Positions 21,301 to 45,886 are shown, counted from the first letter of the stretch. The stretch is DNA of 64,000 nucleotides from Ascidiella aspersa (GCA_963924565.1 OZ004607.1:30256001-30320000), one strand, 5' to 3'. Notes: generated from the letters alone by a model not told the origin. Translations and numbers: made by a program.

Positions 21301-23075
21301 GATGCATTAGAGACTTGCAATAAAAAAAACTGTTTTAAAGCGTTAAGGCCAACAATTTAGCGAAAACTTGCAAATCACAGATCGAACAAACAATACTTTC
21401 TTTGCTTATTATTTTTTAAGCCTAGTTTGCGTCTCAGTTACCGCATTGCTGACTACGTAGGCCTGTCTAACTGTTCGGCGCTGGCAAAGTATATATATCA
21501 GCTATGAAAACGACGTAAATACTCTTATACTGTCAATCCTGATGGCAAATTTATACACTTTGCGCCTTTGTTTTGTTTGCGAACTGACTTTCACAATCGT
21601 CTTGTTCGCTCAAGTCCACGTTACGTCATCACATACAGCGCGAAAACAAAACAAGGCCTGTTTAGGCTTTTCTGCCGTTTGTAATCCCGATCGAATCTTT
21701 TCCCTTATTTAGCGATATCGCTATCTCCCATCCGACGAGCATAAAAACACGCACTATTAAAGCTGTGTGTGTACGACTTTTGTTCGCTCGTAACAGTGCC
21801 GTCATATGACGTCACAATACCGAAACAGAAGGACCGCTTGTGGCCGTTGTTGTGTGTGCACGGCTTAAGTCCACTCGCCAGCAATAATCGCATTTGCGCC
21901 ACAGACTTGCTTGTATATTACGCGCGCTGTGCGGTCGCGACTCTCCGAGGTGTCAACCCTTGCCATTCCCGCACGGCTCAGCCACCTTTAAGCGCATTTC
22001 GTCATTACCAGAACAAACCTAATAAGACTTGTCGCCGACCCGTCTCCCCCTATTTTTGCGGTATTAAAAAGTGAAAAAAAGTTCGCCTGGGAATATCGTC
22101 GCTTTTGCTTCGAGCTATAGACAATAACGTTCGTTAGGAGTTGTTCGGGTTATCTTTTATTAACGTATTTCATTAACCGGAACGTTGATAGCGTTTTTTA
22201 ATTAAACAAACGCTTTTTAACGTGGTTTAAGTTTCTAGCTGTTTTTACTCCAATACTCTTTAAAAGTTGGTCTGTAAGAGAATTTTTTCCCATAGCAGTT
22301 CAAAAACAAGGGTTTTAAATCCCCAATAAACATTTTGTAATTTTTTGTAACTAATTCCAAATGATTGGCTCAAATAAGTATTGTGAATTTTACATTTAAA
22401 TAAGTGGTTTAACACCAACGCATGTTCTCGTTTTCCTTTGTTAACGAAATCAATTTAAATAAAAAACAAATACCATACAAATCGAACTTAAACGCTTGGG
22501 ACCTTTTGACCGCGATTTTTTTAAGATCCTTAAGAAATAGGCCCGTCGCTTTAAAACAGGCTTTGCGCTGGCTAATTGGCATAAAATACCCTTTACGCCA
22601 TTTCTTCACACAAGTATCACGTTCTCGTTAAACACAGGCCAGACTTAAGCTCAAAATTCACCACATAAGCGAAATCGCATCCTTTCTCGCGAGAAAGCGA
22701 AAACAACGCAAAGCACGTAATAAGAATATCAAAGCCCATACAGAAGTAAACATAGTTAAAAATGAATAAAGAGTTATTCGAAACGTTCAAAATGATACCT
22801 ACTTCTGTATGGGCTTTGATATTCTTATTACGTCTTACTACAACCTCCAACCATTATGCTCCAAAACGTAAAACGCCTTTATTTTTGTTTTGCAGCCGGG
22901 CACAACACTATCTCAGGCCGAGGACGGAACCATCTACGTCACGCAGGAGGATGGCACCACGACGCCGCTTGATTCTCAGAAGGGGGTTCCCCTCGAAACG
23001 GTCGAGTCTCTGCTCTCGCTGGAAGGACAACAACAACAACAACAGCAACAACAGCAGCAGCAACAACAGGAGTGA
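389..23075 (+). CDS. ZNF839: ZNF839-like (DUF4764) protein, 3' portion; 5' exons lie outside the window
   Basis: Phase-consistent GT-AG exons 389-550, 1149-1346, 2739-2852, 16396-16489, 17201-17358, 18139-18236, 20811-21051, 22896-23075 (1245 nt, stop TGA). [35 protein letters not shown]|[23 protein letters not shown] resembles the recalled ZNF839 DUF4764 core ([23 protein letters not shown]...IYKEFEELHK). The C-terminal [12 protein letters not shown]|[11 protein letters not shown] resembles the recalled ZNF839 C-terminus ([22 protein letters not shown]). Confidence 0.8.
5395..13758 (-). CDS. Secreted fibulin-like protein (signal peptide, 7 Ca-binding EGF repeats, fibulin-type C-terminal domain), ~478 aa, nested in a ZNF839 intron
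   Basis: Exons 13758-13637 ([20 protein letters not shown] signal peptide), 12072-11936, 10926-10817, 9786-9615, 7425-7219, 6881-6779, 6275-6089, 5793-5395. All are GT-AG and in phase (1437 nt). EGF starts: DIDEC, DIDEC, DINEC, DEDEC, DVNEC, DDQEC, DKNEC, each with a CxNxxG/AS[YF]xC motif. The C-terminus [12 protein letters not shown] is typical of fibulins/hemicentin. Confidence 0.9.
17716..17996. mobile_element. Degenerate hAT-type MITE
   Basis: Termini cagtgtttctcaac ... ttgaaacactg; TSD poorly conserved. Confidence 0.5.
22757..22857 (+). repeat. ~100-bp dispersed repeat, copy 1 (SINE/LINE-tail-like)
   Basis: aaaatgaataaagagttattcgaaacgttcaaaatgatacctacttctgtatgggctttgatattcttattacgtcttactacaacctccaaccatta; near-identical copies at ~37242, ~58859 (rc) and ~61176. 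Confidence 0.85.
23028..23069 (+). repeat. CAA/CAG coding microsatellite (14 Gln) at the ZNF839 C-terminus
   Basis: caacaacaacaacaacagcaacaacagcagcagcaacaacag directly before GAG TGA. Confidence 0.9.
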
Positions 23076-30198: not shown

Positions 30199-31461
30199 TA
30201 CTATAGTGACAGTAAAAATGCAATTTTTTGGGGTAAATAAACACACGTGTAGTCTACTAACCACTTTCCGGATTATTTTTATTTTTTATTCAGTCAAAAA
30301 ACTGACTTAAGATGTTTGGTAACACTGTTTTACAATAGACATAACCAACGTAGGCAGACAAACAAAAATGTCATACGGCCTAAAAAACTTCTGCACGAGT
30401 CGTGCCAAAAACGTACTACCGGTAATTCCTATTTAGAGTTCAGAATTTAGAATTTGTCTAAAAAACATATGTTTCAATATACAATTAAACCTCTGCAACC
30501 GTGGTTCTCAAACTTTTTCAACTTGTGGTACACTAAGAAAACAAAGGCACACTTTCCATTGTTGTAATGACTTGAGTCAATGGCTTGACTTGAGTGCATT
30601 TGAATTACTGTTTTAAAATTACTTTACTTTACTGGACTCAAGTCGTCATTGTGCCAAATCACTTTATTTTTCTCAGTTTTTACAATGAAAATAATTTGCT
30701 TCCTATATGTTGCGCTTTTCTTATTCTTTAGTGAAGACATTGATTATACACGGACAAGTTTTCCAATTTTCAAAGTTTAACCTAGTTGGCTCGAACTTGC
30801 TGGTCGATTGATAACTATATTAAGCTTTAAATATTGGCACACTCCATTTCGACTTATCTGCAGACACTTTTTTTTATGCGAGAATACAGGCCAAATTTCA
30901 TGAAAATGGATCCAACTAAAAGGTAAAATTATCGTACTTGGCTCAAATGACTCAGGCCAAGTCGAGATATTTAAAAACAGTATCTTCAGTACATTCGCTT
31001 AATGTATTCCACACATTGAATATCTATTAAAAATTACGCAATTTGTGAAACATTATTTTAGGTGGAAATCTGATTCTTGGTATGTCTTTGCTTAGTTTAG
31101 AAACTTTAGACTTTAGACATACAATAGGGTCCACAAAATACGGTCTCTATGTATCCTTAATAGTATAACAGTGTTGACAAAAGTTTCAAAAACTTGGAAA
31201 TTAATGGAAACTTGGCATTACTTCTCTCAGATGGCAGATTACTACACCCCTGTCTGTTATTACAATGGTGCAGGAAAACAGGATTTCGTTCAGTTCAGCC
31301 ACATTCTATTTTTACGATAGTCAGTGTGTTTATCAAAAAAAAAACATTAAATTACTATGTTTAATATCAGACTGAATTAGTGTTGTATATTTGTAAAATA
31401 AAGCATAAAAGAGAAAGTTTGCCCCCAACCATCCTATTTCTCCACAGCGCCACCACTCTCT

Positions 31462-31504
31462 ATCGCCAAGCAACCAGCTATTTTCACCTTTGCCCCTGAC
31501 GTAA
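31462..31504 (+). promoter_or_regulatory. Candidate RFX X-box-like site plus CRE-like site upstream of DYNLT1
   Basis: ATCGCCAAGCAAC (31462-31474) resembles the X-box GTNRCC(N0-3)RGYAAC; TGACGTAA at ~31498. Both lie 90-130 bp upstream of the ATG. Confidence 0.4.
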
Positions 31505-31594
31505 CTGAAATTTGGTCATCAAACAGATATTTTGACTTGAAATCAATTGAGGTTTTTTGGACAATTTTTGACCAACTTTAACGCCAGTTTAGCC

Positions 31595-31936
31595 ATGGAT
31601 GACTTTCAGGCCGGAGAAGAGACGACTTTCGTTGTGGACGACGTTAGCAACGTCATAAAGGAGTCGATCGAAAACACGATCGGGGGAAACGCCTACCAGC
31701 ACAACAAAGTCAACCAGTGGACCTCAAATGTGGTGGAATTGTGCCTGAACCAGCTCACCAAGCTGAATCGGCCCTTCAAGTACATTGTGACCGCGGTTAT
31801 CATGCAAAAGAACGGTGCCGGACTGCACACGGCCAGCTCTTGCTATTGGGACAATTCGACAGACGGAAGCTGCACCCTGAGATGGGAAAACAAGACCATG
31901 TACTGTATTGTTAGCGTGTTCGGCTTGGCTATTTAG
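31595..31936 (+). CDS. DYNLT1: Dynein light chain Tctex-type 1, 113 aa, intronless CDS
   Basis: gccATGg start. [48 protein letters not shown]...[52 protein letters not shown] closely matches recalled DYNLT1. Confidence 0.97.
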
Positions 31937-32265
31937 ATACGCAGAACGAGTGTTACGTTTTTCCACATTTCGCACATTCACTTGTATTTTTACCGCTTTC
32001 AAAATTAAACTTTTAATGACACTAAGCCTCTATTTTGCAGTTAATGAGATATATGCGCTGTAAAGACACCTACATTTATGGTTTAAAGATTTTCAGGCGA
32101 ATAAATTACTAGAATTTTATTTCTTTTCACAGAAATGTAGTATTTGTGTGCATGTTTATTTTGTTTCGTAAGTTTCCTGTTAAAAATATTAGTGTATACT
32201 GTTATTTTTATTAAACTGTATTATCACCAAATTAGGTTGAAAGTAAGCCTAGGTACATTTGCTCA

Positions 32266-35200
32266 ATGGATGACTGTGACTTGGAAAAACTAACTGCTTC
32301 GCCAGCAAAGCTTTCTCCAAAGTTTAACAGAAATACAACTGAATATGAAGCCACAGTGGCAAGTAGTGTGAAAAAAGTTAAAGTGGATTGTATGACCAGT
32401 GATAGTGGAGCATCTTACCAAGTGTTTGTGAGTTGTTTTGTGTGTTCAAATACATATTGTTTTTGTTTTTTGAAATGTCTTTGGTTTATTTTTAAAATGT
32501 TTAAATAATAAATAATTTGCTCAAGAGTCGGTGCAGGGTTTTTACAAAGTCATTGAGTCTTTAAAAGCTTTTGAATTGATTTGTGTATTGATTTTAATCA
32601 AAAGTTCTATGAAAACATGTTTTTCCAAAAAAGCATTTCAATAGTCTTTGAATTTATCTTATATGAAGCTTTTTTATAATACTTGACTTACCCCTACCCA
32701 AACGCTAACCCAAATAATGTTAATATAAGCCCCGGGACGATTACATTTTAGGTCTTCAAAGAGCTACACATTTTTTTAAAATGTCTTTCAATTATTTTCA
32801 TAAAACTGTGTGGCAACCCTGCAGTGGAAATCATAAAATTTAGCCATATTTGTCACATGCATCAGATGTTTTGTGCTTTAAATAATTGTAGTTGCGTATA
32901 ACCAAACAAAATGTCATAAAACAACCTCAAGTAAAAAGGAATATTTTCAAAAAAATGCTCACAACATATTACCTCTAGTTAGATATATAAGAGAAACTAA
33001 AATTCACAGACAAGTCTTTCAAATACCTTAAAATTTGAAAAAATATATATCAGGTTTAAACATCACTCAAGTTGTAATTATGGGTAAACGTTTTTGGAAA
33101 AAATATTTTTGGAAGGTTTTTATGCTAGGGAGCAGGTGGGGAGAAAAGCATACCCTTAACAGAAGGTGCTGTTACCGAAATCAAAATAGAAGTATCATCA
33201 GAAGATGGCACGACCAAGCAATACTTCATAAGGGTCAAACGCTTGTCAGCCTCAGATGCCACACTCAAGCAATTGTCAATATCCAATGGAAAATTGGAAC
33301 CTGCATTTACAATGGACTGCTATGAGTACACATGTAAGAAATAACAAAACCACATATCAATAGGTCTCTTGTTAAAGTCCACAATTGTAAATCAATCTGA
33401 TGTTAACAGTGGGCATAATACGCTAAATCAATTATGATTTCTGCAGAAAACAAACAATGTAAACTTCCTAAAGTTAGTTATTTTATATTTGTTTTTTTTA
33501 GAAAATTGTTTCACCTACTAAGTTTATGAATGTTTTCTGCGAAACATTAGCTTTATCCCTTTAAAAAACATCTACAAAGTTTGCATTTCTACAATAATAG
33601 GTAATTTACTGATAAAAAGCACTTGTCAAACAACATTCCACTAACTATGGTGCTTTTAAGCTGTCCTTTATATTGAAGAGCTTTTAGTAATATTCTAATT
33701 GTACATTTTTTCCCATTTTCATGGCACAAACATGGTTAATTTATGTTGTCCTGTCTGTATTTTAGCAACTGTGCCATGTCAAATTACCGAAATCACAGTC
33801 ACAGCAGTTGCACCAGACAAGAAGTGTGTTGTCGTGGTTGCTAATGCAAGTCCAGAGTCAGCGGTTCCTTTGCTGATGGGTGAAACTGTTCTCACTGTTG
33901 CTGTTACCTCAGTTGACGGTAAAAACAGAAAGGTATAGAAAACAAAAAACATACATGATTTAAGTGACCATGTATTTTTTAATGACATGTTGGCTGTTGC
34001 AAACCTTGAATCTTGAGGAAATTTATGCGTTTTACTATTACTGGAGGATAAAGTAAGCTCATGTAGATTTGGATTATTTTGTTCCAACGGCCCATGGCAT
34101 AAATAATTTAGGAAAACAATCTTTCTGGAAACAATGACTTTAAAGTAGCTATAAAATAACTGGAGTCTGAGATATTGAAAACTAGTCTCGCACTTTATAA
34201 CTAAAGTAATTTCCATAATCCAACTCCAGCCAAATTTACCAATGGCTTTGAGTATAGAGTCTGGGTCTGACTCTACTGAAAATTTTCCATTATATGCTAT
34301 CCAACCTTTTATTGGTTTCCAATTTTCTACAAGCATATGTCAGACTATATTTTCATTGAGTTGTGAATCCCTGTTCAACATATTACTTTACGTTGTTTAA
34401 GTTCTGTTGAAAAACATTATTTTAAAATGTTTTGTTCACATGAGGGCTCTGTTTATTTTTAAACCTATAACTACAATTCTTATTGATACAGTTTTAAACT
34501 TGATTGTTTTAGTAATTTAGCCTCTTAGGTTATAAAAAAATATTTTTGTGATTACAATTTCAAACATTATTCTTAATTGATGGTTGCTGCAATGTCAAGG
34601 AAAATATTCTTACAATAAATTCCATTAGAATTGCAATAGTATTTGAGTTATGCTGTTTTTTATCATTGAAAAGAGTTATGTGCCAATTTTAATCACAATA
34701 CAAACATATCACGAATAATAATTAACATAGCAATTTTGTGTCATGATTGTAGGACTACACAGTTGTGGTAAGTCGCAAACAACTGCCATGGTATGTGGTG
34801 CTGAAAGATGAGGGCAAAGCACAGTCCTGGGAATGTCCGATGACTTTAAGTCCGTTCTACAATCCTGTTGCTATTGCTGGATCAGACCCCAGAGTGGTGA
34901 TGTCACAACCTTGTATTGACATGTTGACTAGAAGGTATGCAGTGAGCAAATATTTTTAAAGTAGCCTTTGTATATGTATATTTTTACATGACAAAGTATT
35001 TTATGTTTTTTGATTGTTTTGCATCACAAGAATCTTCATAGCATAAACAATTACGTTTGTTGATAACTTTGGAATATCAAAAGTTCGATTTAAACTTTAA
35101 TTGTTGTAAAACATCAAGGTATAGCTATCTTGCTCAACTGCAGTTGTGTGAAGCTCTGTTGAAACAAAAACTAAAAAGTTTTGTATCTATAATATTATAT

Positions 35201-38200
35201 ATATATATATACAGTACATGTAGATTTTAATGAAATTTAAGTTTGGTGAAAAAGCAAAATATGTGCCTCATTTACGTTTACGTGTATGTAGATCTAAGGT
35301 GAATCCAATGAATGAAGCTGCTCTTGACAAGGATTGGAAAGTAATTGACACCAAATTAGACCAAGAATTATCAGACACTCTTGCCTTGTCGGTTTACAAC
35401 TATAAAGGTAAGAATTTTCACAAAAAAATAAATCCTGCAATAAGAAACTATTGATTTGAATGTTATTTAAGTACTGGCTTAACATTGTGGAATTTTACTT
35501 TACAGAGTTTTTTTTTGTTATTTCAACTAATTATTTTACTTGTTGCCTATCAAATGAGGGTCATCTTTCTACCAATCTACAATTTTTCTACAAATTAAGG
35601 GGTCTCTGAAGAGCTTCCGTTGAAAAACATGGCAAACCGCATCACTTCCTGTGAGCAAAAGCCAAGTGAGGAGGTCGACACCAAAAAAGTAACCGAAAGT
35701 GCCTGGTACAAGGCCGACTTCGAAGGCTCCAGTACAACAACCAAAACTATTTCACACAAAGTAGAGGTATGTTAAGAATATGGTTGTAGCAGGGTACCTA
35801 TTTCAAATAGTTTAACCTGTATTAATATGTATACTAAAATTAGCCAGATTGGTAGTGTTGAACTGACTTAATTAGTAAATATAGTGTTATTTAAGCTAAT
35901 TGTTAAATGTAATATAATTATTAACTGCTACTTGTTTCGGTTTTTGCTGTTCTGCTCAAAATCCTGCTCTACAGAAGATTGGCCTTAAGATATTTTGCAA
36001 ATGTTTTGCCTGGGAATGGCTTTATAGTAAACACCTTTTGATAAAAGAAAAACGTTTATTTGAACTACATTTTCCAAAAATGAGGAAACTGTATATTTGG
36101 TATATAACTTTAAATTCAAACTGTGAAAAGCACTTATACAGGTTTAAGATTTTAGATAAAATGCGATGTAACAAAAACAAAAATCGGTAAAGAGCTATAG
36201 TCGTTATTGCACAACAGTAGATAATTTCTACATCAATTTATTACAAGCAGGTGCGCAACTGGGAAAAGCGTTTACAGCACATGGCAAGCGACACCAACCC
36301 TGATACGTTGGTTAAAGAAGCGGACAAAAAACAAAAGTCCTATCGACAGAAACTGCCACTCAAACCAGGTATAAACCAATGTGCAAAAAAAAACACATGC
36401 GCCATGCATCGTTAGTAAAAATTCAAGGTTGTGTTTCCAAGATCAGCAAAAGTTGTAAAACAAAATCCAAATTATTTGTATTTCCACGATAAATATACAT
36501 ATACAAAATTCTTTGTGTCTTTTGAGTTGCTACTTTTATTTTTCAGTTGTTTTTAGCTTGTAAACAATTACCCCAAACGGAGTAATTCAATAATTTTAGC
36601 GCGTTGTTTGGGAATGATATTAGATGGTAATGTGGTATCCCAAATCGTTTCAATTTTTATTGTTTATTTGAATAATAGATCAATCTAGAGTGTTTTTTTC
36701 CTAATTGATTACATATCATGCATTACACTGCACTTGAAAAAAAAGTGTTAAACAAAATATTGTTTTAGATTATTATCAGGGCTGGTGACGCTTTTTAAAG
36801 GTTAACAACCCCTGTTATATTTAAACATAGACCATATACATCACGCCATATTTTTCAACGTCAGCTAACAACTTGTTTACGTTCAAAATCCAGGAGAGGC
36901 TGCGAGGTTTCCGGAAGGGGAAGCCCCGTCCGACGACTTGCAGCAGTCGTGCGTATGTCTGGCCGCCGCCCTCAAGGTCAAAAGCAATGACGCCAAGCTG
37001 CACCTGCGCCTGGGACACGCGCTCGAAGAGAACCACTACCTGAAAGAAGTGTTCGGACTGCACAAGCACGTAGGTTGTTTGCTCGTGTCGTGTGTAGTCA
37101 CAACTACCAAACTGTTTAAACGAGTGATTGTGATTTGGCTACTGTTTGAATTGCAACGGCAAAGGCAGATCGCAGCGTGTCAATATGGCTGTTGATATGC
37201 TCTTCAAGTCGTTTTGTGGAAAGCGATAGCGATGGTTTGTTATGTTGAAAATGAATAAAGAGTTATTCCAAACGTTCAAAATCATAGCTACTTCTGTATG
37301 GGCTTTGATATTCTTATTACGTCTTACTACAACCTCCAACCATTAGGCTCCAATTGTTTGTTTGATGTTTAACTATTAAACATTCATACAACATATGCAC
37401 TTCGCAGTTTAGCGAAATGACAAAGCCAAAAATATGGTAAAAATTAGAACAACCTTTGGGTTGACTTTTTGCCTTTAAACATTGTAGATGAGTTGGAGCC
37501 AATTTAAAAAGTCCACATTTAATAAATATGACAAGCACATATTTTCTTTACCTGTCGTTCAAATGCTAAAACCAGTTAAGTCTCTAAAATGTGAATTTGT
37601 GGGTAAATAATAGACTAAGCGTCGCAATCATCTGCCACTGTCGGTCATTGAACTGACATTCCGATCTAAGGTTGCAACTTGCAATTCAAACAAATGGCAA
37701 TCAAAACAGTAAAAATGAATTTGACAAGTGTACAAACACCATGAAACTCTATTATTATTTAACATATGTGAGGAAACGATCAACCTTTACGGCAAGTGTT
37801 GCAGTGGTTCGAACAGAGTTACGGGCCATGATCTATTCGTGACACAGCGCCTGAACGCAGTATGCAATTTTGATCGAACGCGATCACAATTTTAGAGCAG
37901 GGGTTTTTAAACGGGGTTCCATTCACCCCTTGGTGATCCGGCAACTAGTGTTAGGGGGTCCATGAAGGCCAAATTGAAATATTAGTGTGAAGTACACAAT
38001 GAGAAAGTACACAAAGAAGTACACAATGATGGGTTCCGTTATCGTTGCCCAACATGGCTTCAGAAGGACTTGACCAACGAATACACAATCATTATGTATA
38101 TGTATGTTTCAGTTGTATTAAAGGACTAATCAATTTTTCAAATATATTTTAACTCTATTTCTCTTTTACATTTTTGGACTGAAATCAGCAAATTTATAAA

Positions 38201-41200
38201 GTATATTTGTATTGTGACGTCTATTTATGACGTCCTTTTTTATAAATGTTCTTGCCTGCAGTGGTCCACGCGAAGCCAAAAAAAATTTTAGTGCTCCGTA
38301 GTAAAAAAAGTTTAAGAAACCCTGTTTTATAGTATATAACTCATTACCTCTACAGGAAGAAGCGGAAGAGTTGGACGCTGGAACGGACAAAAGCGCCAAG
38401 GAAAGCTCTAAGCTGGAGGAGTGCCAGGCCATCTGCAAGCTTCACGGGGTCGCCGCAACCGCGCCCATCGCCCTGCAGCTGAAGGCCATCGACCAGGAGT
38501 ACAGGAGCTTGCGCGAAAGCGGACAGTCGGGCAGGGCTGACCACGTGCAAGGACTCTACGCGTGGAGGTCAAAGCAAGCGCTCAAGGTCGTGCTGGGCGC
38601 GAGCATTGGTGGTCGCTCTTCCGCTTAATGCGCACTGCCTGTTATTTTTTCTTTTTGTGGCGACGACGCAATTATGAAAAGTTAATCAACGGCTTAGCTT
38701 TGACCAACCTTTTTTTTACGATGGTGTTCTCGTATGCCAAATTAACAAAATAGACGTGTGACAAAAAGTTCAAATTTAATAGTGTACTGGCCTTATGTTT
38801 TTAATACGTTTTTAGTTTTGTCATTTTCTAAAAAACGATTTTTATTTTTTACTCCATAAATTCTTAGCCTCGTATTCGCTTTTATTGGTATGGTCAACGT
38901 TTTCAGTATAAAACCTTGGCACGTGCGTATTTCCAAGTCCAAAATAAAATGTAGTAAACGGGACTTAAAAAGTAATTTTGGGCGATCTCTTAAAATTAGT
39001 TAGCGGTCACCAAGCCAAACCTTAATAAAAAACTGCTCGTAGCTACAACCACTTACCAAAGCTATTCAACCACAACCCTTTGCGAATTGTGTACCCAGGG
39101 CGACAAATCGACTGCCTCTCACGCCGACGAGAGCTCGCCGCTTACCCAGGCCTACCTAAAGTACATGGACGCGCTGGCTTGTGACCCGAACAACTACCTG
39201 TGCAACCTGCACGTCGCCAGGCTGCTCGTCGAGCGAGAGGAATACGCAGAGGCAGTTGTGAGACTGCAACAGGCGGTCGGCCTTAAACCGGTCAGCGTCG
39301 AAGCAAGGTGAGCGATTAAAATGAAGAATCTGTTTGGTTGGTGTTGATTTACGTTTTGGTTCATTGGTTGCCAGTTTGGTTGTTAAGGTTTTAATTTTTT
39401 GAAATTGGTTAAAACGATTTGAGGAACCAAATCCACAGAAGGAACCTCTTGTGGATTCTGATTTTTACATTTTTTAAGCGAGTGCCTAATTTGCAGTCTT
39501 GTAAACAAGTCATTTTGAAATGACTAATGTCCCAGTCAAGTCTTTTCAACAAAATAGCAAGTCAAGTCCCAGTCCAAGTCACCAGTTGCCCAAGACAAGT
39601 CATTATTAGAGAAAGTCATCTCCAAGTCAAACCACTAATATAATAGTAAAACGGTTAACTCGCCCGATTATTTATTATTAGAAATAATTCAACAACAAAA
39701 ATAGCAAAAAACAATATGTAGTAATTTAATCGTTTTACATGCAAAATTAAGATAAATAGCTCCACTTTATAATAAAATGTTAAATGTAAACAGTTTATTT
39801 CAACCCAAGTCAATTGACTAATCAGTGCTTCTAAAACTTTTTTAGTTTTGTTCACCCCTAGCATCCATCTCCAGATTTCGTTCACCCTTGTCTCTTGATA
39901 TGATAAAACTACCTCGTCTATATATAACAGCACAAAATGACTTGAGTTGTTTCGCAAGCTATCACCTATTTCTCTCGGTTCACCCTTATTCATCCCTTTT
40001 TGTTAGTTCAACCCTGAAACAATTTTAATCACCCTGGGGTGAACCATTCACCTGATTAAGAAACATTGGACTAAATTATTGAAGTCAATCAAGTCAAGTA
40101 ATTTTACCAATATGACTAAAGTCATGCAAGTTAATTAACTAAAACGATTAAAGTCATGTCAAGTAATTTAAAAACAGTGCACTTAAGTCTAGTCATTGAC
40201 TTAAGTCATTACAACACTGCTAATTTGAGAAGCAGTGGTCGCTATTACCTACGGTCATGCGTTCAATTCTTAGCGAGCACCATTTTTGATTTCTCTGGCC
40301 AAGAAGTAATTCACTAAGATATTACGAAAATGCCTTGTTTTATCAAATTTATGCTGTTGTTAGATTTCTACTCGGCTTGGCTCTCTTGCAAGCGAAGGAC
40401 GAGGCCCGACAGAAAGAAGCCGTTGAGTTTCTCCACGAAGGTCTTGACCATTACATGTTGCGAAGACAGAAGGACGCAGAAGCGGAAGGTAAAGGGCGTT
40501 TTAGAAGCAAAATTGATCATTTTATATCCCAAAGCGAACGCTTCTATGATATCATGAGAAAATCCTGATTAAATCGACTAATTTCGGTAAGGTTTTCCGG
40601 AAGCATCGTGTGTACTTCTATGTTATGTCACGCTTGGAAACCTTATCTTACGTAAAAATATTTATTTTTTGTTTTTACTATATATATTTTTTGTAGATAT
40701 TTTTACAGAGGAGCCTTTTAAATTTATCTATACTGTGTTGCTTCGAGCAATGTTTTAACAATAATATTTTTCATTTTAAAGCTATTGTTTCATAAAAGTG
40801 AATCACATTGTATATGTTTTTAGGTTGTCAAAACCAACCAAAGTCAACCTTAAAATGTCCATGCACACGCTAGATTGTAGCAAATGCAAGTCGTGTAAAA
40901 CCTCCATGTCACTTCAGGTGTCAATCCTTCCTCGGCGACCGATCTACACTGCGAAGACTACTGGCGCCTTTCAAACATGCAGTTTCTCAACGGCCTCATG
41001 CTGTTAGCCAGCCACTTAAGGAAAACACCCGTGCCCGGAATAAGGACAGCAAAGGAGATTTACCACGGGTAAGCTACTTTTCTCATTCTCGAATGCTTAG
41101 CTGTGTTTTTTTATAAAAGCAGTATTTTGCTTACAGTATTTGTCTACACTCGTCAATGGCTTTGTGCTCAATGTACCACCGAGGGAGCATTTTTCAAGAG

Positions 41201-44200
41201 GTAAACGTTAGCTTCGGGGCGTTTTGGTTAAAGAATCAGCAATGCGTAGCTTAAATCCCGTGCAGAAGCGTGTATCGTGAAATGTACACTGTTAGAATAA
41301 AAGTTTAGTATTTTTCAAACTAAAATGTACTTTGATGTGATACTTTAATATAATAGTAAATAAAGTAATTGCACTGTTTAAACTCTCATTAAATCTTCCG
41401 TGATGTAAAATAGTCTTTGCTGTTGAAGTTTTTAATCAGTTTTTGTAAATCATATCTGAAATGCACCAACTGTCGAACCTATGCATTATTAGTTAACGAT
41501 GTGTGTTAATTTACCAACGTCCGTTTCCCTTGTCTTAAACAGCTTGAGTGGACGCTACTGAAGTCGCACTTCGCCCTGCTGGAGATTCTCATGTCTTCAC
41601 CAGGGGCGGGCAAGGGCGCTTGGGTGGCGCAACGTTGTCGCTACCTTTCCGCCATGCTACGATCCTGCACCATACCCCGGGATGATAGGTTGCTTGAAAT
41701 ACAAGAAAAGGTGGGATATTGGCTTTTATAGTTCGATATCTACTGATGAATTGTGGTGATTCAAGAGGTTGGGCAGCATCTAATAATCGCAACCCAAAAT
41801 GTTTGAGTAATTACTTGTAAAACTGTCAGAAAAAACTTTGAAAGAAATCGTAGTAGAATTTTTATTTAACTATTTTGGTATTTGTTGGTTGTTTTACTAT
41901 TGTGTGATACTGCGATTTTACGATCTTAAGTCGCTACCAACTTACTTGTTTAAAGCATTTCGCAACACTACTTCCCCACTACCAAGCAGGGACCCGTTCA
42001 TATTTTTACTATATATTAAAGAAAACTGTTAAAATTTGTCAGAAATGTATAGTATAGCCATATGCAAAAATGGCGCAAGGAACTGTTCTCCTAATGTAAA
42101 TCACCCGAGAATCTAAAAATTAGACCATTTTTTAGCGTAAACGGTGTAAGTTTTTAACCTGGCTCAAAACCAACCCCAGCTTTCGCACTGCTCAGGTTTC
42201 TCAGCACTTGGTCAGTGTGAACCCGTGCAACAGCGAGTCACTCTACCTCCTCGGCGTTGCCCAGCTACAGATCTACGACAACGAGACCGCTTCAGGTGCT
42301 GGTGACGAGCGTCCGCTGCAGGAAGCTATACAGAGCTTCCAGGCAAGCGTCGACCTAGAGGGAAAACCCGCCGCCGGGGAAGTCCCTATAGCAGGTTAGA
42401 GAGTTCCTGACTCCGATGACAAATGTCTTCAAATAGAAAAAACCTTTCATGGAAATCGTTGCACAAGTAATGAGTTGTGAGTCGCTGAGCCCGTTTTTGT
42501 GTATCCGGGTAGCTGGGTTTAAAGAATTGTAGTAGACGGCTCAGCAAAGATAGGTCCGGCCCTGATGTGTCTCGATATAAAAAAACGGTCAAGGTTCCGT
42601 GGTTTCAGTACTGAAATAGCTCAAACTTTTTATTGAACAAAAACAATTGTAGTTGTTTTTTCGGACCTTTAGCAGATCAATGCAGTGATTACTTTATTTG
42701 TAGCTCTTTTTAGTTTCTTAGTGTTTAAAGTTGCAGTGCAGAACGGTTGCGGTGCAGAATTTATTTCAATCCACTTAGAAAATATTATACCGTCACTTTA
42801 CCGATCCCTCATAAAACAGAGGTTCCTATTTCTACAATATTTTTGTGTTGAGCTCAGCGAACAAATACCGTCAAAAAGTGGATATATGCATGGTTTGTTC
42901 AGCGACTTGCATTCACTCGCCTTATTAAAATAAATTCAACTTTTTTTTCCATTTCAAAAACAAAACCCTTATCAATCTTAAACAGGTCAAAAGTGGTACG
43001 TCGAGAAACTGGAAAGAGAAAAACCCAAGCAAGCAGCGGCCCCTGCCCAGGCCCCAGCTGCGGGAAAGTCCCCAGCCAGGGGTAGGGGCGCCCCCGCGGC
43101 CAGGGCCCGCGGCAGGGGGGTTGCCCCGGCCCGAGGCGCCCCGGCCAAAGCCCCACCGGCCGCGAGGGGTGCGGCCAGGGGTGCCCCGAGGGGACGGGGT
43201 GCGTCATCACGTGGAGGAACTGCGGCCCCTGCTGCTGACTCGAAATGCAGTAAGGAGGCCGCGCCTGCACAACCAGCGCAATCACAGGTGAAATACAACT
43301 TTTAAGTTCAAAGCGCGTTTTAGTTATATTGAATTTAAATAAATTACGTAATATTTTGAAAGTTTGTTTTTGAGTTTCAATCATTCCCTTGGTATAATTT
43401 TCCGTGATTAGTTTTTTATTAAGTTTTCAAGAATGCAATCCAAGCATTTCTACCTGACTCGTTTTAAAGCGAATTAACGGCCAACGATGTTTACAAACAT
43501 GTTCAACGCTATTTAAAAAACCCGTTGCTTTTTACTTTGTGTGTCTTACCTAGATGCAAGTATATAACCGAAAAAAAGGTAAACTGAAAGAAATCAAAAT
43601 TCAATCTGATAACTACCATTGCAGGTATAACGCTGCAGCATCGCTGCATTTTCTTACAGCAATGTGTGTACAAAAAATCCAACGATGTAAAACTATGTAA
43701 CAGGACCCAAATCTGATTTTTATCGCCATTGCATTCAAGGTCCCGGCAGCGGCGAAGAAAGCAGATATCAAACCAGCGCCGATAAACAGGAGCACTTACC
43801 ACGCCAGACTTGGACTTGCGAGGGCGCTGTCAAGGACCAAGGACAGAAAGGAAGAATCCCGGGCACGCTACGAAGAAGTGATGAAGATGGCACCAGAGGT
43901 AGGTTTCTGGTGTTTTCTTATGGTTTTGTTGTTGCCGGTATGGCGTTATTGGTCGTAATTTTATAGTTAATAAACATTTTTTGCGATATTGGTTGTTGCT
44001 CTTTACATCTTGGTCGATTTTTTTGTTATCACAGGATCTTCTGGTGTATTGGTGCACTTTGTGGTGCTTTGTTGGTTACGAGTTGTTTACCGATGGTTTT
44101 TTTGTGGTTGGTCGTTTTTTTACGGCGGTTATAATTGTATTTTCGTGGCCCTGGTAAATTCAAATGGTGTTGTTGGCTGATTTGGTTCACGTTGGTGGTG

Positions 44201-45886
44201 TTTTCAAATATCCAGGTGCACGACGCGTACATCGAGTTGGCGGACCAACTGGTGAAGAGCGACCCTCTGGCTGCAGTGGATATTTACTGCAGGTTGGCCT
44301 TTTTTGTTGCAATACATTTGCTACGCGCATAATGCACGACTAATTTAGCAGCTTGTAGTAACTAACAATAGAGAAACTTTTAGTGCAAATCATGAAAATT
44401 AACTGCCTGAGAAAACTCCACAAAACGGCCAACTTTATGGGGTAATACATAACTCCACCCAAGCTTTTGCAAGATGATTAATTAATTCTTTGGTGATTAT
44501 AAGACCACTGTAAATATCACCATGCTCTTATTTAGATAAGATTTAGCGAAATATTCGCCACATTAAGGCTTGGCGTAGCCTGAACAACTGTGCGACACCG
44601 TTTTTTCACCTTAGTCTCACGATTGATATATAAAAATCCAGCCTATTCACCACTACATTTTGGATCCTCTGACCTGCTTTTCAATTTGCATGATAACCGG
44701 GCTCAAACAGCGTACGTCACTGATCTCAAACTCGTCCTTTAAACACTATAACCTCGCGTTGTTTCCGCCGTTATCCTTTTGCCTTCGACTTTAAAACATA
44801 ATTTTTTTATTTCCCAGGTTTCCGAGCAGCAGCGGGGACGACGCTGAGGAGTCGTTCGACGACGCTTACCTCAGCGGAGAGATCGTGAGCATTCTGATGA
44901 AGCACGAGCAACTGGACGACCCGCGCCTGGTCGAGCACATGGTCAAGTGGGGAAGGGTCATGGGAATCGGTGAGTCAAACGTTTTTGTGTTTGCGCGTGT
45001 GGATTTCAAAAATAATGGTGCCCAAAAGCGGGGTTGCGGACTCGGGTAAAAATAACCCGAAGCCAACTCCCGAGTCTGATTTCGACCTAAAAAATTAACC
45101 TGGGTCCGACTCCGGGTCCGACTCTACAGCCTGCATTTCGCCCGATTACGTAACTGAAATAAGGTGGATATTAAGCAATCCACTCACAGGGGAGTCATAT
45201 AAGTCATCCACCCACAATACGTGGTTCTCAAATACTCTACCACATGCTATTTCATCTTTACAATTCTCATCAATTTCGAAATTCGGTACTGCACATGAGC
45301 ACGTCGAACTCAGGAATCGGTTGTTTTACGTAGTCTTACTCGACTGCCGAGTCGAAATCTTATCCATCTTTTAGATTTTGTCCATCATTTTAGCCCACCA
45401 TTTTAAACCTCGATGGGTTTTTTATTTGAAGTATAGTAAGTCTATGATTGAACGTAACTAAGCTGCTTTAAGCTAAAAAGAACTATCAAATACATGGTTT
45501 ATGTGTCACATGGTTTATGTCTCTGTTTAAATTGGATCTGTTTTGTATGTTTGACCTTGATATTTAATTTTGGAATTGACTTGATAAATGTATTAGTTCT
45601 CAAAAATATCGGGTAACGCTTTAGGATACCTTTAGTAGTTTTATCGTTCTTACCGTACAAGCGTTTTTCTATAAAGTCAATCATTGTGCTTTCCTTGAGT
45701 CTGCTTTGTACGTCATTACAACACCCCGTCACGATTTTGTGTTCAGGGGTCCTTGAGAAGTACATGGGCATTCTGGACGCCAAGTTCAAGACCAACATGC
45801 TAAAGAGCATATACGCCGGCGTTCACCAAAAGGACTTGGACGACCCTGATCTCCTGGCCTTCTTTAAGTTCAAATGCTGGATTTAA
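32266..45886 (+). CDS. Uncharacterised ~1089-aa protein: 2x cadherin-like beta-sandwich, U-box/RING-like segment, degenerate TRAF-type finger, TPR repeats, RG/Ala/Pro-rich linker
   Basis: 20 in-phase GT-AG exons: 32266-32427, 33129-33333, 33766-33932, 34753-34934, 35292-35407, 35600-35766, 36251-36368, 36894-37069, 38356-38586, 39099-39307, 40364-40488, 40918-41068, 41137-41200, 41543-41710, 42196-42394, 42986-43287, 43740-43898, 44216-44292, 44818-44969, 45747-45886 (3270 nt). Cadherin-like motifs: LSPKFNRNTTEYEATV, IEVSSEDGTTKQYFIRVKR, VAVTSVDGKNRKDYTVVVSR. U-box-like: WECPMTLSPFYNPV. TPR-like: AKLHLRLGHALEE, EYAEAVVRLQQAVGLKPVSVEARFLLGLALL, SESLYLLGVAQL. Confidence 0.88.
37242..37346 (+). 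repeat. ~100-bp dispersed repeat, copy 2
   Basis: atgttgaaaatgaataaagagttattccaaacgttcaaaatc...caacctccaaccatta. Confidence 0.85.
37898..38324. mobile_element. hAT-type MITE in an intron
   Basis: Termini caggggtttttaaac / tttaagaaaccctg; flanks ttttagag / ttttatag (7/8 TSD match). Confidence 0.65.
39500..40219. repeat. aagtc-rich DNA-transposon-like element; related fragment (rc) at ~30561-30600
   Basis: Many caagtc/aagtca motifs. The terminus tgcacttaagtctagtcattgacttaagtcattacaacactg is an approximate reverse complement of gttgtaatgacttgagtcaatggcttgacttgagtgca at 30561. Confidence 0.5.

What the first reader, a model, noticed from the sequence alone, without database searches (positions are those of the whole stretch)
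32266..45886. Uncharacterised multidomain protein: cadherin-like x2, U-box-like, TPR, RG-rich (candidate cilium- or dynein-associated ubiquitin ligase/adaptor)
Two cadherin-like beta-sandwich repeats, a type best known from bacterial surface proteins, occur here without a signal peptide. They are fused to a U-box/RING-like segment (WECPMTLSPFYNPV...SQPCIDMLTRRSKVNPMNEAAL), several TPRs and a helical C-terminus ending FFKFKCWI. TPR + U-box recalls CHIP-type quality-control ligases, and co-location with a dynein light chain suggests an axonemal or transport role. I recognise no named human orthologue. Function is inference.
Basis: partly seen in the sequence, partly recalled or inferred. Interest (0 to 1): 0.75.

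Follow-up and report, generated by a model that had tools for sequence, protein, structure and literature searches.

The report
Unnamed ancient animal RING-like ligase gene
This is a real, expressed sea-squirt gene from an old, unnamed animal protein family whose middle part folds like the ubiquitin-ligase domain of TRAF6 but has lost its zinc sites; nothing found here ties it to cilia or dynein.

Summary
Window 32266-45886 (+) carries one multi-exon gene. RNA reads confirm four junctions, and homology covers residues 1-1079 of the Ciona orthologue. It encodes two PF12733 cadherin-like domains, a RING/U-box-like domain, a TPR solenoid, an RG-rich disordered loop and a helical C-terminus.

The genome is a tunicate's, judged by its closest orthologues. 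The gene is single-copy. It belongs to a one-to-one orthologue family found from sponges to amphibians. Every source calls it uncharacterized apart from three evident mislabels. No amniote, arthropod or nematode appeared among the rows listed.

The "U-box-like" stretch is homologous to the TRAF6 RING plus first zinc finger (PDB profile E = 7.5e-6; AlphaFold2 and Foldseek/VIA). RING zinc site II is absent in every row. Site I survives in only 7 of 52 rows. In the window, 2 of 8 RING ligand positions and 1 of 4 zinc-finger positions are Cys. The positions that contact the E2 in TRAF6 are conserved.

The most likely function is a zinc-free RING-type E3 on a TPR scaffold. This is inferred, not shown. 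The resemblance to CHIP and the cilium/dynein link are not supported. The scan noted the DYNLT adjacency separately (s1-806535).

The parts
31595..31936 (+). Neighbouring uninterrupted Tctex-1/DYNLT ORF. This is context, not part of the gene.
   Evidence: PF03645, 116 bits, E = 9.9e-34. ATG located. RNA depth 100-157.
32100..32132 (+). AATAAA (32100-32105), then a pyrimidine tract and AG (32131-32132), lying between the Tctex-1 stop and the ATG of the large gene. A possible poly(A) site / trans-splice acceptor.
   Evidence: Read directly from the sequence. No spliced-leader read was seen. The layout resembles Ciona operons as described in PMC1488885.
32266..32427 (+). Exon 1: start codon and N-terminal half of cadherin-like domain 1.
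   Evidence: PF12733, 28.1 bits. Junction 32427|33129. 93% identical to Ciona residues 1-54.
33129..33333 (+). Exon 2: C-terminal half of cadherin-like domain 1 and start of domain 2.
   Evidence: PF12733, 26.7 bits. Junctions at both ends.
33766..33932 (+). Exon 3: core of cadherin-like domain 2.
   Evidence: PF12733, 19.1 bits, below cut-off. Junctions at both ends. Matches Ciona residues 121-176.
34753..34934 (+). Exon 4: last strand of cadherin-like domain 2 and first two thirds of the RING/U-box-like domain (the ECP motif).
   Evidence: Junctions at both ends. Weak zf-Nse hit. As phmmer query it recovered the family. Key residues.
35292..35407 (+). Exon 5: last third of the RING/U-box-like domain (N-P pair in place of TRAF6 C105-P106, and the invariant Trp). 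The 3' end is inferred from GT and reading phase only.
   Evidence: 5' junction 34934|35292. Matches Ciona residues 231-285. Key residues.
35593..35769 (+). Exon with the degenerate TRAF-type zinc finger (1 of 4 ligand positions is Cys). Boundaries not confirmed.
   Evidence: Matches Ciona residues 276-335. Ligand positions. RNA depth 0.7.
36245..36391 (+). Exon: conserved linker holding the invariant W338 of the family, and start of the helical region. Boundaries not confirmed.
   Evidence: Matches Ciona residues 333-381. Invariant W338.
36884..37063 (+). Exon: first TPR-like helices.
   Evidence: Matches Ciona residues 371-430. TPR_11, 14.9 bits, below cut-off.
38356..38586 (+). Exon: helical region, the best-conserved exon.
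   Evidence: 70% identical to Ciona residues 432-508, E = 3.9e-27.
39093..39317 (+). Exon: TPR repeats.
   Evidence: TPR_11 19.4 bits and TPR_17 19.2 bits, both below cut-off. Matches Ciona residues 507-581.
40353..40487 (+). Exon: TPR/helical region.
   Evidence: blastp against Clavelina and Ciona, residues about 575-621. Not among the 17 matches.
40908..41078 (+). Exon: helical solenoid.
   Evidence: Matches Ciona residues 619-675.
41522..41728 (+). Exon: helical solenoid.
   Evidence: Matches Ciona residues 687-754.
42094..42387 (+). Exon: TPR repeat and end of the central solenoid. The true exon is shorter than the match.
   Evidence: Matches Ciona residues 707-811 with stops inside the match. 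TPR_17, 18.0 bits.
42982..43302 (+). RG-rich exon, given as the stop-free segment. A disordered loop.
   Evidence: 10 RG dipeptides in 107 aa. The equivalent Ciona residues 837-918 have pLDDT about 30.
43770..43904 (+). Exon: first C-terminal TPR-like helices.
   Evidence: Matches Ciona residues 918-962.
44210..44296 (+). Exon: C-terminal helical domain.
   Evidence: Matches Ciona residues 959-987.
44801..44983 (+). Exon: C-terminal helical domain.
   Evidence: Matches Ciona residues 981-1038.
45734..45886 (+). Last exon: conserved C-terminus and TAA stop.
   Evidence: 80% identical to Ciona residues 1030-1079. Stop codon read.

Best explanation
Shown:
- The window holds the single-copy tunicate orthologue of an unnamed protein family inherited vertically since the first animals.
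- The family's fixed architecture is: two cytosolic cadherin-like beta-sandwich domains (PF12733); a RING-fold domain homologous to the TRAF6 RING; a TRAF-type zinc finger; a roughly 500-residue TPR solenoid; an RG-rich disordered loop; and a C-terminal TPR-like helical domain.
- The RING has lost its zinc sites. Site II is gone in all members. Site I is kept only in the sponge, cnidarian and acorn-worm rows. The domain is therefore a U-box in the structural sense, and it arose inside a TRAF6-like lineage.
- In the window's species the zinc finger is degenerate as well.

Inferred:
- The zinc-free RING still docks a ubiquitin-conjugating enzyme through the conserved E-C-P-(I/V/M)-x-L and (D/N)-P surfaces.
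- The protein therefore acts as a RING-type E3 ubiquitin ligase.
- The TPR solenoid holds partners or substrates. The N-terminal beta-sandwich pair binds a ligand, possibly a glycan. The RG loop adds weak multivalent or RNA contacts.
- The adjacency to the dynein light chain gene reflects tunicate genome layout, possibly an operon, and not a shared function.
For: Gene reality:
- Four junctions from RNA reads.
- 17 of 17 own-genome matches lie in this locus.
- 6 of 8 read-versus-assembly differences in exons 1-5 are synonymous.

Family:
- A 60-aa exon recovered full-length orthologues at E down to 4.8e-09.
- Sources call them uncharacterized or hypothetical.
- The maximum-likelihood tree of 52 rows follows the animal phylogeny, with 37 of 49 inner branches at SH-aLRT >= 95.
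- PF12733 is found in 43 of 43 orthologues and TPR_11 in 39 of 43.

RING homology:
- The family profile hits TRAF6 RING plus zinc finger at E = 7.5e-6 (profile positions 197-322 to chain residues 13-137). RNF125, SIAH1, LNX2 and TRIM21 follow more weakly.
- The residue-level alignment shares the ECP motif with TRAF6.
- AlphaFold2 model of the domain: pLDDT 94-96 over the core.
- Foldseek's top five PDB hits are TRAF6/TRAF5 RINGs, E = 3.3e-4 to 8.7e-4.
- VIA-align gives TRAF6 Z = 9.5-10.0, rmsd 2.0-2.4, 90-93 residues aligned, 27-29% identity.
- Pfam RING models match 2-3 of 43 members each.

E2 surface:
- The TRAF6 residues said to contact Ubc13 are Glu69, Pro71, Ile72, Leu74, Met75, Ala101 and Pro106 (PMC5346735 discussion, passage read, citing Yin et al. 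2009).
- Their equivalents in the 61 rows are E in 54, P in 57, an aliphatic or aromatic residue in 61, L in 57, and P in 57.
- The window has E, P, M, L and P.

Whole protein:
- AlphaFold2 model of the Ciona orthologue: pLDDT 83.6, pTM 0.77. Only residues 433-442, 507-516 and 837-918 are disordered.
- Foldseek finds generic TPR scaffolds.
Against: - No biochemical or expression data exist for any member in the library I searched.
- All zinc ligands of site II, and in most lineages those of site I, are gone. Stability and E2 binding therefore rest on a model.
- Pfam's U-box model did not match at the thresholds used.
- By Z-score alone TRAF6 ties with RING1B (10.0 against 10.3). The special closeness to TRAF6 rests on sequence and aligned length.
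- The domain model was made on an unnamed fragment (P0008), not on the window's own protein.
- Conservation of the E2-contact positions could also serve folding.
- Met75 and Ala101 equivalents were not examined.
Confidence: 0.6

Rival explanations
1. Pseudo-ligase or scaffold. The zinc-free RING-like domain no longer recruits an E2. It serves as a dimerisation or packing module in a large TPR adaptor, and the protein organises a complex without catalysing ubiquitin transfer.
For: - Zinc site II is absent in all 52 full-length rows and site I in 45 of 52.
- The adjoining TRAF-type zinc finger is complete (C-C-H-C) in only 16 of 52 rows and degenerate in the window.
- The TRAF6 first zinc finger is said to be needed with the RING for Ubc13 interaction (PMC5346735 passage).
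- pTM 0.77 suggests the domain is packed into a rigid whole.
Against: - The positions equivalent to the TRAF6-Ubc13 contacts are among the most conserved of the protein, in 54-61 of 61 rows.
- Zinc-free U-boxes are active ligases. CHIP, E4B and Ufd2 U-boxes, solved with their E2s, align to the model at Z = 8.3-9.3.
Confidence: 0.25
2. One reading: a cilium- or dynein-associated ligase or adaptor, functionally coupled to the neighbouring dynein light chain.
For: - It lies on the same strand, 329 bases downstream of an expressed Tctex-1 gene.
- The layout AATAAA, then pyrimidine tract and AG, resembles a Ciona-type operon.
- Read cover does not drop to zero between the two genes.
- Foldseek hits of the solenoid include IFT-A TPR proteins and a sperm central-apparatus chain, but at TM <= 0.16 and among generic TPR scaffolds.
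Against: - Ciona operon members are reported as independently expressed (PMC1488885 passage).
- RNA depth differs about ten-fold between the two genes.
- No amniote among the listed hits, although amniotes keep motile cilia.
- No spliced-leader or bridging evidence was obtained.
- The genome holds 9 Tctex-1 matches.
Confidence: 0.1
3. An E3 for SUMO or another ubiquitin-like modifier, of the one-zinc SP-RING kind (PIAS/Nse2-like).
For: - Weak zf-Nse (PF11789) hits: 14.9 bits for window exon 4; 17.5 and 13.4 bits in two orthologues.
- Basal members keep exactly one zinc site.
Against: - All zf-Nse scores lie below the 27-bit cut-off.
- zf-Nse is not among the 25 families shown of 28, and the last of these matches only 1 of 43 members.
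- PDB sequence and fold hits are ubiquitin RING/U-box ligases, led by TRAF6.
- The site that is kept is site I. From memory, not checked here, SP-RINGs keep the other site.
Confidence: 0.05

Closest known systems
TRAF6 N-terminal module (RING plus TRAF-type zinc fingers)
   Same: - Best PDB sequence match of the family profile, E = 7.5e-6 over the RING and first finger.
- Shares the ECP motif.
- Top Foldseek hits.
- Longest structural alignment: 90-93 residues, 27-29% identity, Z about 10.
- A C-C-H-C finger follows the RING in 16 of 52 orthologues.
- The Ubc13-contact positions are conserved.
   Different: - No coiled coil and no MATH/TRAF-C domain.
- Zinc site II is absent in all rows and site I in most.
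- It is preceded by two cadherin-like domains and followed by a TPR solenoid.
- It is not a TRAF family member.
U-box E3 ligases (CHIP/STUB1, UBE4B/Ufd2, plant PUBs)
   Same: - A RING fold without zinc.
- U-box structures align at Z = 8.3-9.3.
- The PUB12 U-box is the second PDB sequence hit of the small profile, E = 0.29.
- CHIP also combines TPR with such a domain.
   Different: - Pfam's U-box model was not matched.
- Sequence is closer to TRAF6 than to any U-box.
- The domain order is the reverse of CHIP's.
- The TPR part is a long solenoid, not a three-repeat clamp.
- Basal members still hold one zinc site, so the zinc loss happened within this family.
PF12733 cadherin-like beta-sandwich domains (bacterial surface proteins; human CPED1/C7orf58)
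   Same: - Pfam matches above cut-off in the window and in 43 of 43 orthologues.
- The sea-urchin orthologue LOC580673 was one of the metazoan proteins named when the domain was defined. A carbohydrate-binding role and bacterial origin were proposed there (PMC2824669, passages read).
   Different: - Here the domains sit at the N-terminus of a protein in which I see no signal peptide, fused to a ligase-type domain.
- That paper's text does not mention the RING or TPR parts: its 'TPR' and 'U-box' counts are 0. Its supplement was not seen.
SP-RING (zf-MIZ / zf-Nse) SUMO ligases
   Same: A RING derivative with a reduced set of zinc ligands. There are weak zf-Nse hits.
   Different: All scores are below cut-off, and the nearest structures are ubiquitin ligases.
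IFT172 C-terminal U-box-like domain
   Same: A recently described zinc-poor U-box-like domain at the end of a TPR-rich ciliary protein (PMC13290226; search listing and start of abstract only).
   Different: No sequence or fold match to IFT172 was seen in any search here. The domain order and family are different.

Membership tests
RING/U-box fold superfamily | Cross-brace-type beta-beta-alpha fold. | tested here: met
   AlphaFold2 model, core pLDDT 94-96. Foldseek finds RING and U-box chains only, led by TRAF6. VIA Z = 8-10. The test was made on orthologue fragment P0008, not on the window's joined protein.
RING finger proper | Eight zinc ligands forming two sites. | tested here: not met
   The C85 and C105 equivalents are never Cys in 61 rows. 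All four site-I Cys are present in 7 of 52 full-length rows. The window has Cys at 2 of 8 positions.
U-box (Pfam PF04564) | Match to the U-box sequence model. | tested here: not met
   No PF04564 hit at E <= 1 on window exons or at E <= 0.1 on 7 proteins. It is not among the 25 families shown of 28 for 43 members. There is only a PDB hit to the PUB12 U-box at E = 0.29.
RING/U-box E3 ligases | Conserved E2-docking surface. | tested here: met
   The equivalents of TRAF6 E69, P71, I72, L74 and P106 are conserved in 54-61 of 61 rows and in the window. The contact list comes from a passage of PMC5346735. M75 and A101 were not examined.
RING/U-box E3 ligases | E2-dependent ubiquitin transfer. | not testable with these tools
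   This needs biochemistry.
TRAF family | TRAF-type zinc finger(s) after the RING. | tested here: not met
   Not met in the window: 1 of 4 ligand positions is Cys. Complete C-C-H-C in 16 of 52 orthologues. Weak Sina_ZnF and zf_C2HC_14 hits in two orthologues.
TRAF family | C-terminal coiled coil and MATH/TRAF-C domain. | tested here: not met
   No MATH hit in the window exons or orthologues. The C-terminal part is a TPR solenoid.
CHIP-type TPR plus U-box quality-control ligases | N-terminal three-repeat TPR clamp, then a helical linker, then a C-terminal U-box. | tested here: not met
   The order here is RING-like (about residues 195-260) followed by the solenoid (about 340-836 and 920-1079). 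CHIP U-boxes score below TRAF6: Z = 8.2-8.9 against 9.5-10.0. EEVD binding was not tested.
Cadherin-like beta sandwich (PF12733) | Pfam match above the gathering score. | tested here: met
   Window exons 1 and 2 score 28.1 and 26.7 bits against a cut-off of 24.2. Orthologues score 87-104 bits with two stretches each.
TPR repeat proteins | Pfam TPR match above cut-off and a helical-hairpin solenoid. | tested here: met
   Window exons taken singly are below cut-off, best 19.4 bits. The closest orthologue, P0084, has TPR_17 at 43.1 bits and TPR_11 at 37.8 bits, both above cut-off. TPR_11 matches 39 of 43 orthologues. The model is all-helical and its Foldseek hits are TPR scaffolds.
SP-RING (zf-Nse, PF11789) | Pfam match above the gathering score. 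| tested here: not met
   Scores of 14.9, 17.5 and 13.4 bits against a cut-off of 27.
Motile-cilium / dynein-associated proteins | Distribution that follows motile cilia; expression in ciliated cells. | tested here: inconclusive
   The family is present in many ciliated animals. No amniote appears among the 87 hits or the 120 listed of 164. Tissue expression is not testable here, because the sample of run X5 is coded.

The most novel reading that the evidence does not exclude
The family is an ancient cytosolic glycan-sensing ubiquitin ligase. The bacterial-type, putatively carbohydrate-binding beta-sandwich pair at the N-terminus would recognise sugars that should not be in the cytosol, such as lumenal glycans on ruptured vesicles or microbial surface polysaccharide. 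The TRAF6-like zinc-free RING would then build ubiquitin signals on a TPR platform. On this reading it is a defence or membrane-damage pathway that amniotes and ecdysozoans lost. Separately, the family offers a natural series, from a one-zinc RING in sponges and corals to a zinc-free U-box in most bilaterians, with several parallel losses.
Probability: 0.1. Interest if true: 0.85.

Novelty: new variant of a known kind. Interest (0 to 1): 0.55.

Why it matters
RING and U-box ligases are well known. This architecture, with cadherin-like domains, a TRAF6-like zinc-free RING and a TPR solenoid, has no described member. It is nonetheless single-copy and conserved from sponges to frogs and fishes, including laboratory species (Ciona, Xenopus, sea urchin, oyster, amphioxus).

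Because it is missing from mammals, flies and worms as far as the listed hits show, it has escaped study. It would add an unrecognised branch to the animal ubiquitin system.

The stepwise and repeated loss of zinc sites within one orthologous family gives a direct way to ask how a RING becomes a U-box.

For genome annotation, it gives a basis for naming hundreds of "uncharacterized LOC" entries.

Tried and rejected
CHIP-like reading. Rejected on domain order and on the ranking of matches.

Third Ig-like domain. The phmmer search with exon 4 also listed long proteins with 5-9 weak stretches each (P0002, P0007, P0013 and others). Pfam shows that P0007 and P0013 are He_PIG/PKD Ig-repeat proteins of unnamed ENA origin. 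I take these as summed chance or compositional matches to the strand-rich part of the query. The high-confidence RING model argues against a beta-sandwich there.

SP-RING reading. All scores are below cut-off.

Function from the fold of the whole protein. Foldseek with the 1079-residue model gave only generic TPR scaffolds (CTR9, SKI3, OGT, IFT-A, Tom71 and others) at TM <= 0.16.

The C-terminal 165 residues in the ESM Atlas. The look-alikes were only generic TPR proteins, with scores 0.92-0.94.

Literature.
- Gene and protein identifiers of 17 orthologues (the eighteenth term, LOC117357752, belongs to P0061). One paper holds one of them: PMC2824669, which mentions LOC580673 only as carrying the cadherin-like domain.
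- Domain words. Nothing on this family.
- served to find the TRAF6 contact residues.
- served to find the paper on Ciona operons.
Additional file 1 of PMC2824669 (architecture lists) and any expression or proteome tables that name these LOC numbers could not be seen and may bear on function.

Synteny of the Tctex-1 adjacency in other tunicates.

Spliced leader at the 5' end. The loose-end table was filled by an interspersed repeat at 37242-37353, and 58 further rows were not shown. Trans-splicing is therefore neither shown nor excluded.

Whole spliced model of the window. Exons were searched one by one. Whole-protein work used database orthologues.

Full report
**What is there**

On the + strand between 32266 and 45886 lies one gene of about 20 exons.

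- A stranded RNA-seq run of the same species label (X5) was laid on 31400-37399. It shows four GT..AG junctions, each with 4-5 reads starting at 3-4 places: 32427|33129, 33333|33766, 33932|34753 and 34934|35292. The last two are read with the cut 2 places to the right. All first mates lie on the minus strand, as expected for a + strand RNA in a stranded library.
- A six-frame search of the window's own 308.6-Mb assembly with the Ciona orthologue gave 17 matches. All are in this locus, in order, and cover residues 1-1079. The gene is therefore complete and single-copy.
- Of eight places in exons 1-5 where the reads differ from the assembly, six are synonymous. This fits a gene under purifying selection, but the sample is small.
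Each exon was handled alone, and whole-protein work was done on database orthologues.

**Domains in the window**

- Pfam places exons 1 and 2 in PF12733 (cadherin-like beta sandwich) above the gathering score: 28.1 and 26.7 bits against 24.2. Exon 3 scores just below it at 19.1 bits. The profile coordinates show two domains split by introns.
- The TPR hits of single exons are all below cut-off.
- The RG-rich exon has 10 RG dipeptides in 107 residues.
- The N-terminus has no hydrophobic stretch (direct reading).
- The reading frame ends with the conserved FFKFKCWI and TAA.

**Which organism and which family**

- A phmmer search of 1.84 billion representatives with exon 4 alone (60 aa) gave 36 hits at E <= 0.001. 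They include full-length proteins of 850-1240 aa that carry the match at residues 180-238.
- Their sources call them uncharacterized or hypothetical. They come from a crinoid, a scallop, teleosts, amphioxus, an acorn worm and a ray.
- A profile search of the 5.8-billion-protein collection gave 87 proteins at E <= 1e-5. About 60 are family members. They come from a sponge, cnidarians, molluscs, annelids, nemerteans, a bryozoan, echinoderms, amphioxus, tunicates, a skate and amphibians. The rest match only the cadherin-like part and include bacterial proteins.
- A second search with a caecilian protein gave 164 hits at E <= 1e-10, of which 120 were listed. Among them are frogs, salamanders, Xenopus, coelacanth, sturgeon, gar, bowfin, bichir, many teleosts and cartilaginous fishes. 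There is no reptile, bird or mammal. The 44 unlisted hits were not seen.
- Neither list holds an arthropod, nematode or flatworm.
- Three listed names look like mislabels: "target of EGR1", "PNO1" and "membrane protein".
- Exon by exon, the window is closest to Ciona, Clavelina and Styela, at 45-93% identity. I therefore take the genome to be a tunicate's.
- A maximum-likelihood tree of 52 rows reproduces the animal tree: sponge group, cnidarians, then amphioxus, ambulacrarians, tunicates plus vertebrates, and lophotrochozoans. 37 of 49 inner branches have SH-aLRT >= 95. This is what one-to-one orthologues inherited since the first animals would give.

**The RING/U-box-like domain**

- The window's exon 4 gave only a weak zf-Nse hit.
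- The family profile matches the sequence of the TRAF6 RING plus first zinc finger in the PDB at E = 7.5e-6 (profile 197-322 to chain 13-137). Weaker hits go to RNF125, SIAH1, LNX2 and TRIM21.
- A smaller profile aligns the shared ECP motif and the following helix residue by residue to TRAF6. Its second hit is a plant U-box.
- I folded a database fragment that covers just this domain (P0008, 129 aa) with a 61-row alignment. Mean pLDDT is 81, and 94-96 over residues 40-110.
- Foldseek against the PDB puts TRAF6/TRAF5 RINGs in the first five places (E = 3.3e-4 to 8.7e-4). LNX, RING1B/BMI1, RAG1, TRIM21, RNF8 and U-boxes follow.
- VIA-align gives RING1B Z = 10.3 with 73 residues aligned. TRAF6 gets Z = 9.5-10.0, rmsd 2.0-2.4, with 90-93 residues aligned at 27-29% identity. 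E4B, Ufd2 and CHIP U-boxes get Z = 8.3-9.3.
- By Z alone the RINGs are tied. TRAF6 stands out by aligned length, by identity and by the sequence search.

**Zinc sites**

I mapped the eight TRAF6 ligands onto the alignment using the pairing printed.

- The equivalents of C85 and C105 (site II) are never Cys in 61 rows. They are Pro in 56 rows, and Asp in 53 or Asn in 8.
- All four site-I Cys are present in only 7 of 52 full-length rows: the sponge, three unnamed rows that group with it, two cnidarians and Saccoglossus.
- The ancestral protein therefore already had a one-zinc RING.
- On the tree, the last site was lost more than once: in echinoderms, amphioxus, tunicates plus vertebrates, and lophotrochozoans. 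This assumes no regain.
- Pfam's RING models still recognise 2-3 of 43 members each.
- The TRAF-type finger after the RING is a complete C-C-H-C in 16 of 52 rows: amphioxus, echinoderms, vertebrates and cnidarians. It is degenerate in molluscs, tunicates and others.
- The window has Cys at 2 of the 8 RING positions and at 1 of the 4 finger positions. In this species both modules must be zinc-free.

**E2 surface**

A passage of PMC5346735, citing Yin et al. 2009, lists Glu69, Pro71, Ile72, Leu74, Met75, Ala101 and Pro106 of the TRAF6 RING as the contacts with Ubc13. I checked five of these.

| TRAF6 residue | Equivalent in 61 rows | Window |
|---|---|---|
| Glu69 | E in 54 | E |
| Pro71 | P in 57 | P |
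| Ile72 | I, V, F, M or L in 61 | M |
| Leu74 | L in 57 | L |
| Pro106 | P in 57 | P |

This is the main reason to think the domain still docks an E2. It is an inference, not a demonstration.

**The rest of the protein**

- The AlphaFold2 model of the Ciona orthologue (1079 aa, 52-row alignment) has pLDDT 83.6 and pTM 0.77.
- Residues 1-190 form two beta sandwiches. Residues 195-300 form the RING-like module and the finger remnant. Residues 340-836 form an all-helical solenoid.
- Residues 837-918, the RG-rich part, are disordered with pLDDT about 30. Residues 920-1079 are helical again.
- Foldseek finds only generic TPR scaffolds at TM <= 0.16. The ESM Atlas finds only TPR look-alikes for the C-terminal part.
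- The cadherin-like domain was defined in PMC2824669. That paper names the sea-urchin orthologue LOC580673 among its few metazoan carriers. It proposes a carbohydrate-binding role and a bacterial origin for the domain. Its text does not mention the other domains of this protein (its supplement was not seen).

**The dynein neighbour**

- An uninterrupted Tctex-1 ORF (31595-31936; PF03645, 116 bits) lies 329 bases upstream on the same strand.
- It is covered 100-157 deep. The large gene is covered 1.5-15 deep.
- Between the two genes there is an AATAAA (32100-32105). It is followed 26 bases later by a pyrimidine tract and AG (32131-32132).
- This resembles the Ciona operons described in PMC1488885, where the poly(A) site of the upstream gene abuts the trans-splice acceptor of the next. 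The same paper reports that operon members appeared independently expressed (passages read).
- I saw no spliced-leader read, because the loose-end table was filled by a repeat.
- The genome has 9 Tctex-1 matches.
- Other first-stage notes report operon-like units elsewhere in this genome (unchecked).
- The adjacency is therefore weak evidence for shared function. The phyletic pattern, absent from the listed amniotes, does not follow motile cilia.

**Verdict**

- The ligase-type fold is real and can be named more precisely: a TRAF6-like RING that became a U-box within this family.
- The CHIP analogy and the cilium/dynein role lack support.

The most likely mechanism is an E2-recruiting zinc-free RING on a TPR platform, with an N-terminal ligand-binding beta-sandwich pair. 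I put this at about 0.6. A non-catalytic scaffold is the main rival.

I found no description of the family in seven literature searches, apart from the single mention above.

I rate it a new variant of a known kind, of moderate interest. It is an ancient, conserved, unstudied ligase-like family that is present in several laboratory animals and, as far as the listed hits show, absent from mammals, flies and worms. It also carries a natural series of zinc-site losses.

Noticed in passing
window 37242-37353; copies at 22755-22864, 61175-61258 and 58850-58963 (minus strand): A short interspersed repeat of about 110 bp lies inside an intron of the gene, with three more copies in the window at 86-95% identity. 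In RNA run X5 it gives depth of about 50 on both strands with many loose ends and strand-switching joints, so it is transcribed from many places in the genome.
   Followed up: partly
window 31595-32266: The Tctex-1/DYNLT gene is a single uninterrupted ORF and is highly expressed. AATAAA at 32100-32105 is followed by a pyrimidine tract and AG at 32131-32132, then the ATG of the next gene at 32266. Read cover falls stepwise (49 at 32099, 26 at 32167, 6-8 at 32244-32249, 15 at 32355) but never to zero. This is compatible with a tunicate operon or with overlapping UTRs.
   Followed up: partly
orthologue alignment A2/A4 (no window coordinates): Within one orthologous family the last RING zinc site (four Cys) is kept in the sponge, cnidarian and Saccoglossus rows and lost in echinoderms, amphioxus, tunicates plus vertebrates, and lophotrochozoans. 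The TRAF-type finger is kept or lost in a different set of lineages. This gives several parallel RING-to-U-box transitions.
   Followed up: yes
window 31400-35400: There are many differences between the RNA reads and the assembly (23 listed places in 6 kb), several of them fixed in the reads, for example 15 of 15 at 32355 and 14 of 14 at 34803. The sequenced animal and the assembled one differ a good deal, as expected for a highly polymorphic marine invertebrate.
   Followed up: no
G000:C3:36284525-36284809 and 7 further places: The genome holds 9 matches to the Tctex-1 family. These include a second full-length uninterrupted ORF on contig 3 and one match with two in-frame TGA codons on contig 2.
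   Followed up: no
database rows P0194, P0198, P0193: Three fish orthologues carry names that do not fit the family: 'target of EGR1 protein 1', 'RNA-binding protein PNO1' and 'putative membrane protein'. These are probably annotation carry-over or fused gene models.
   Followed up: no
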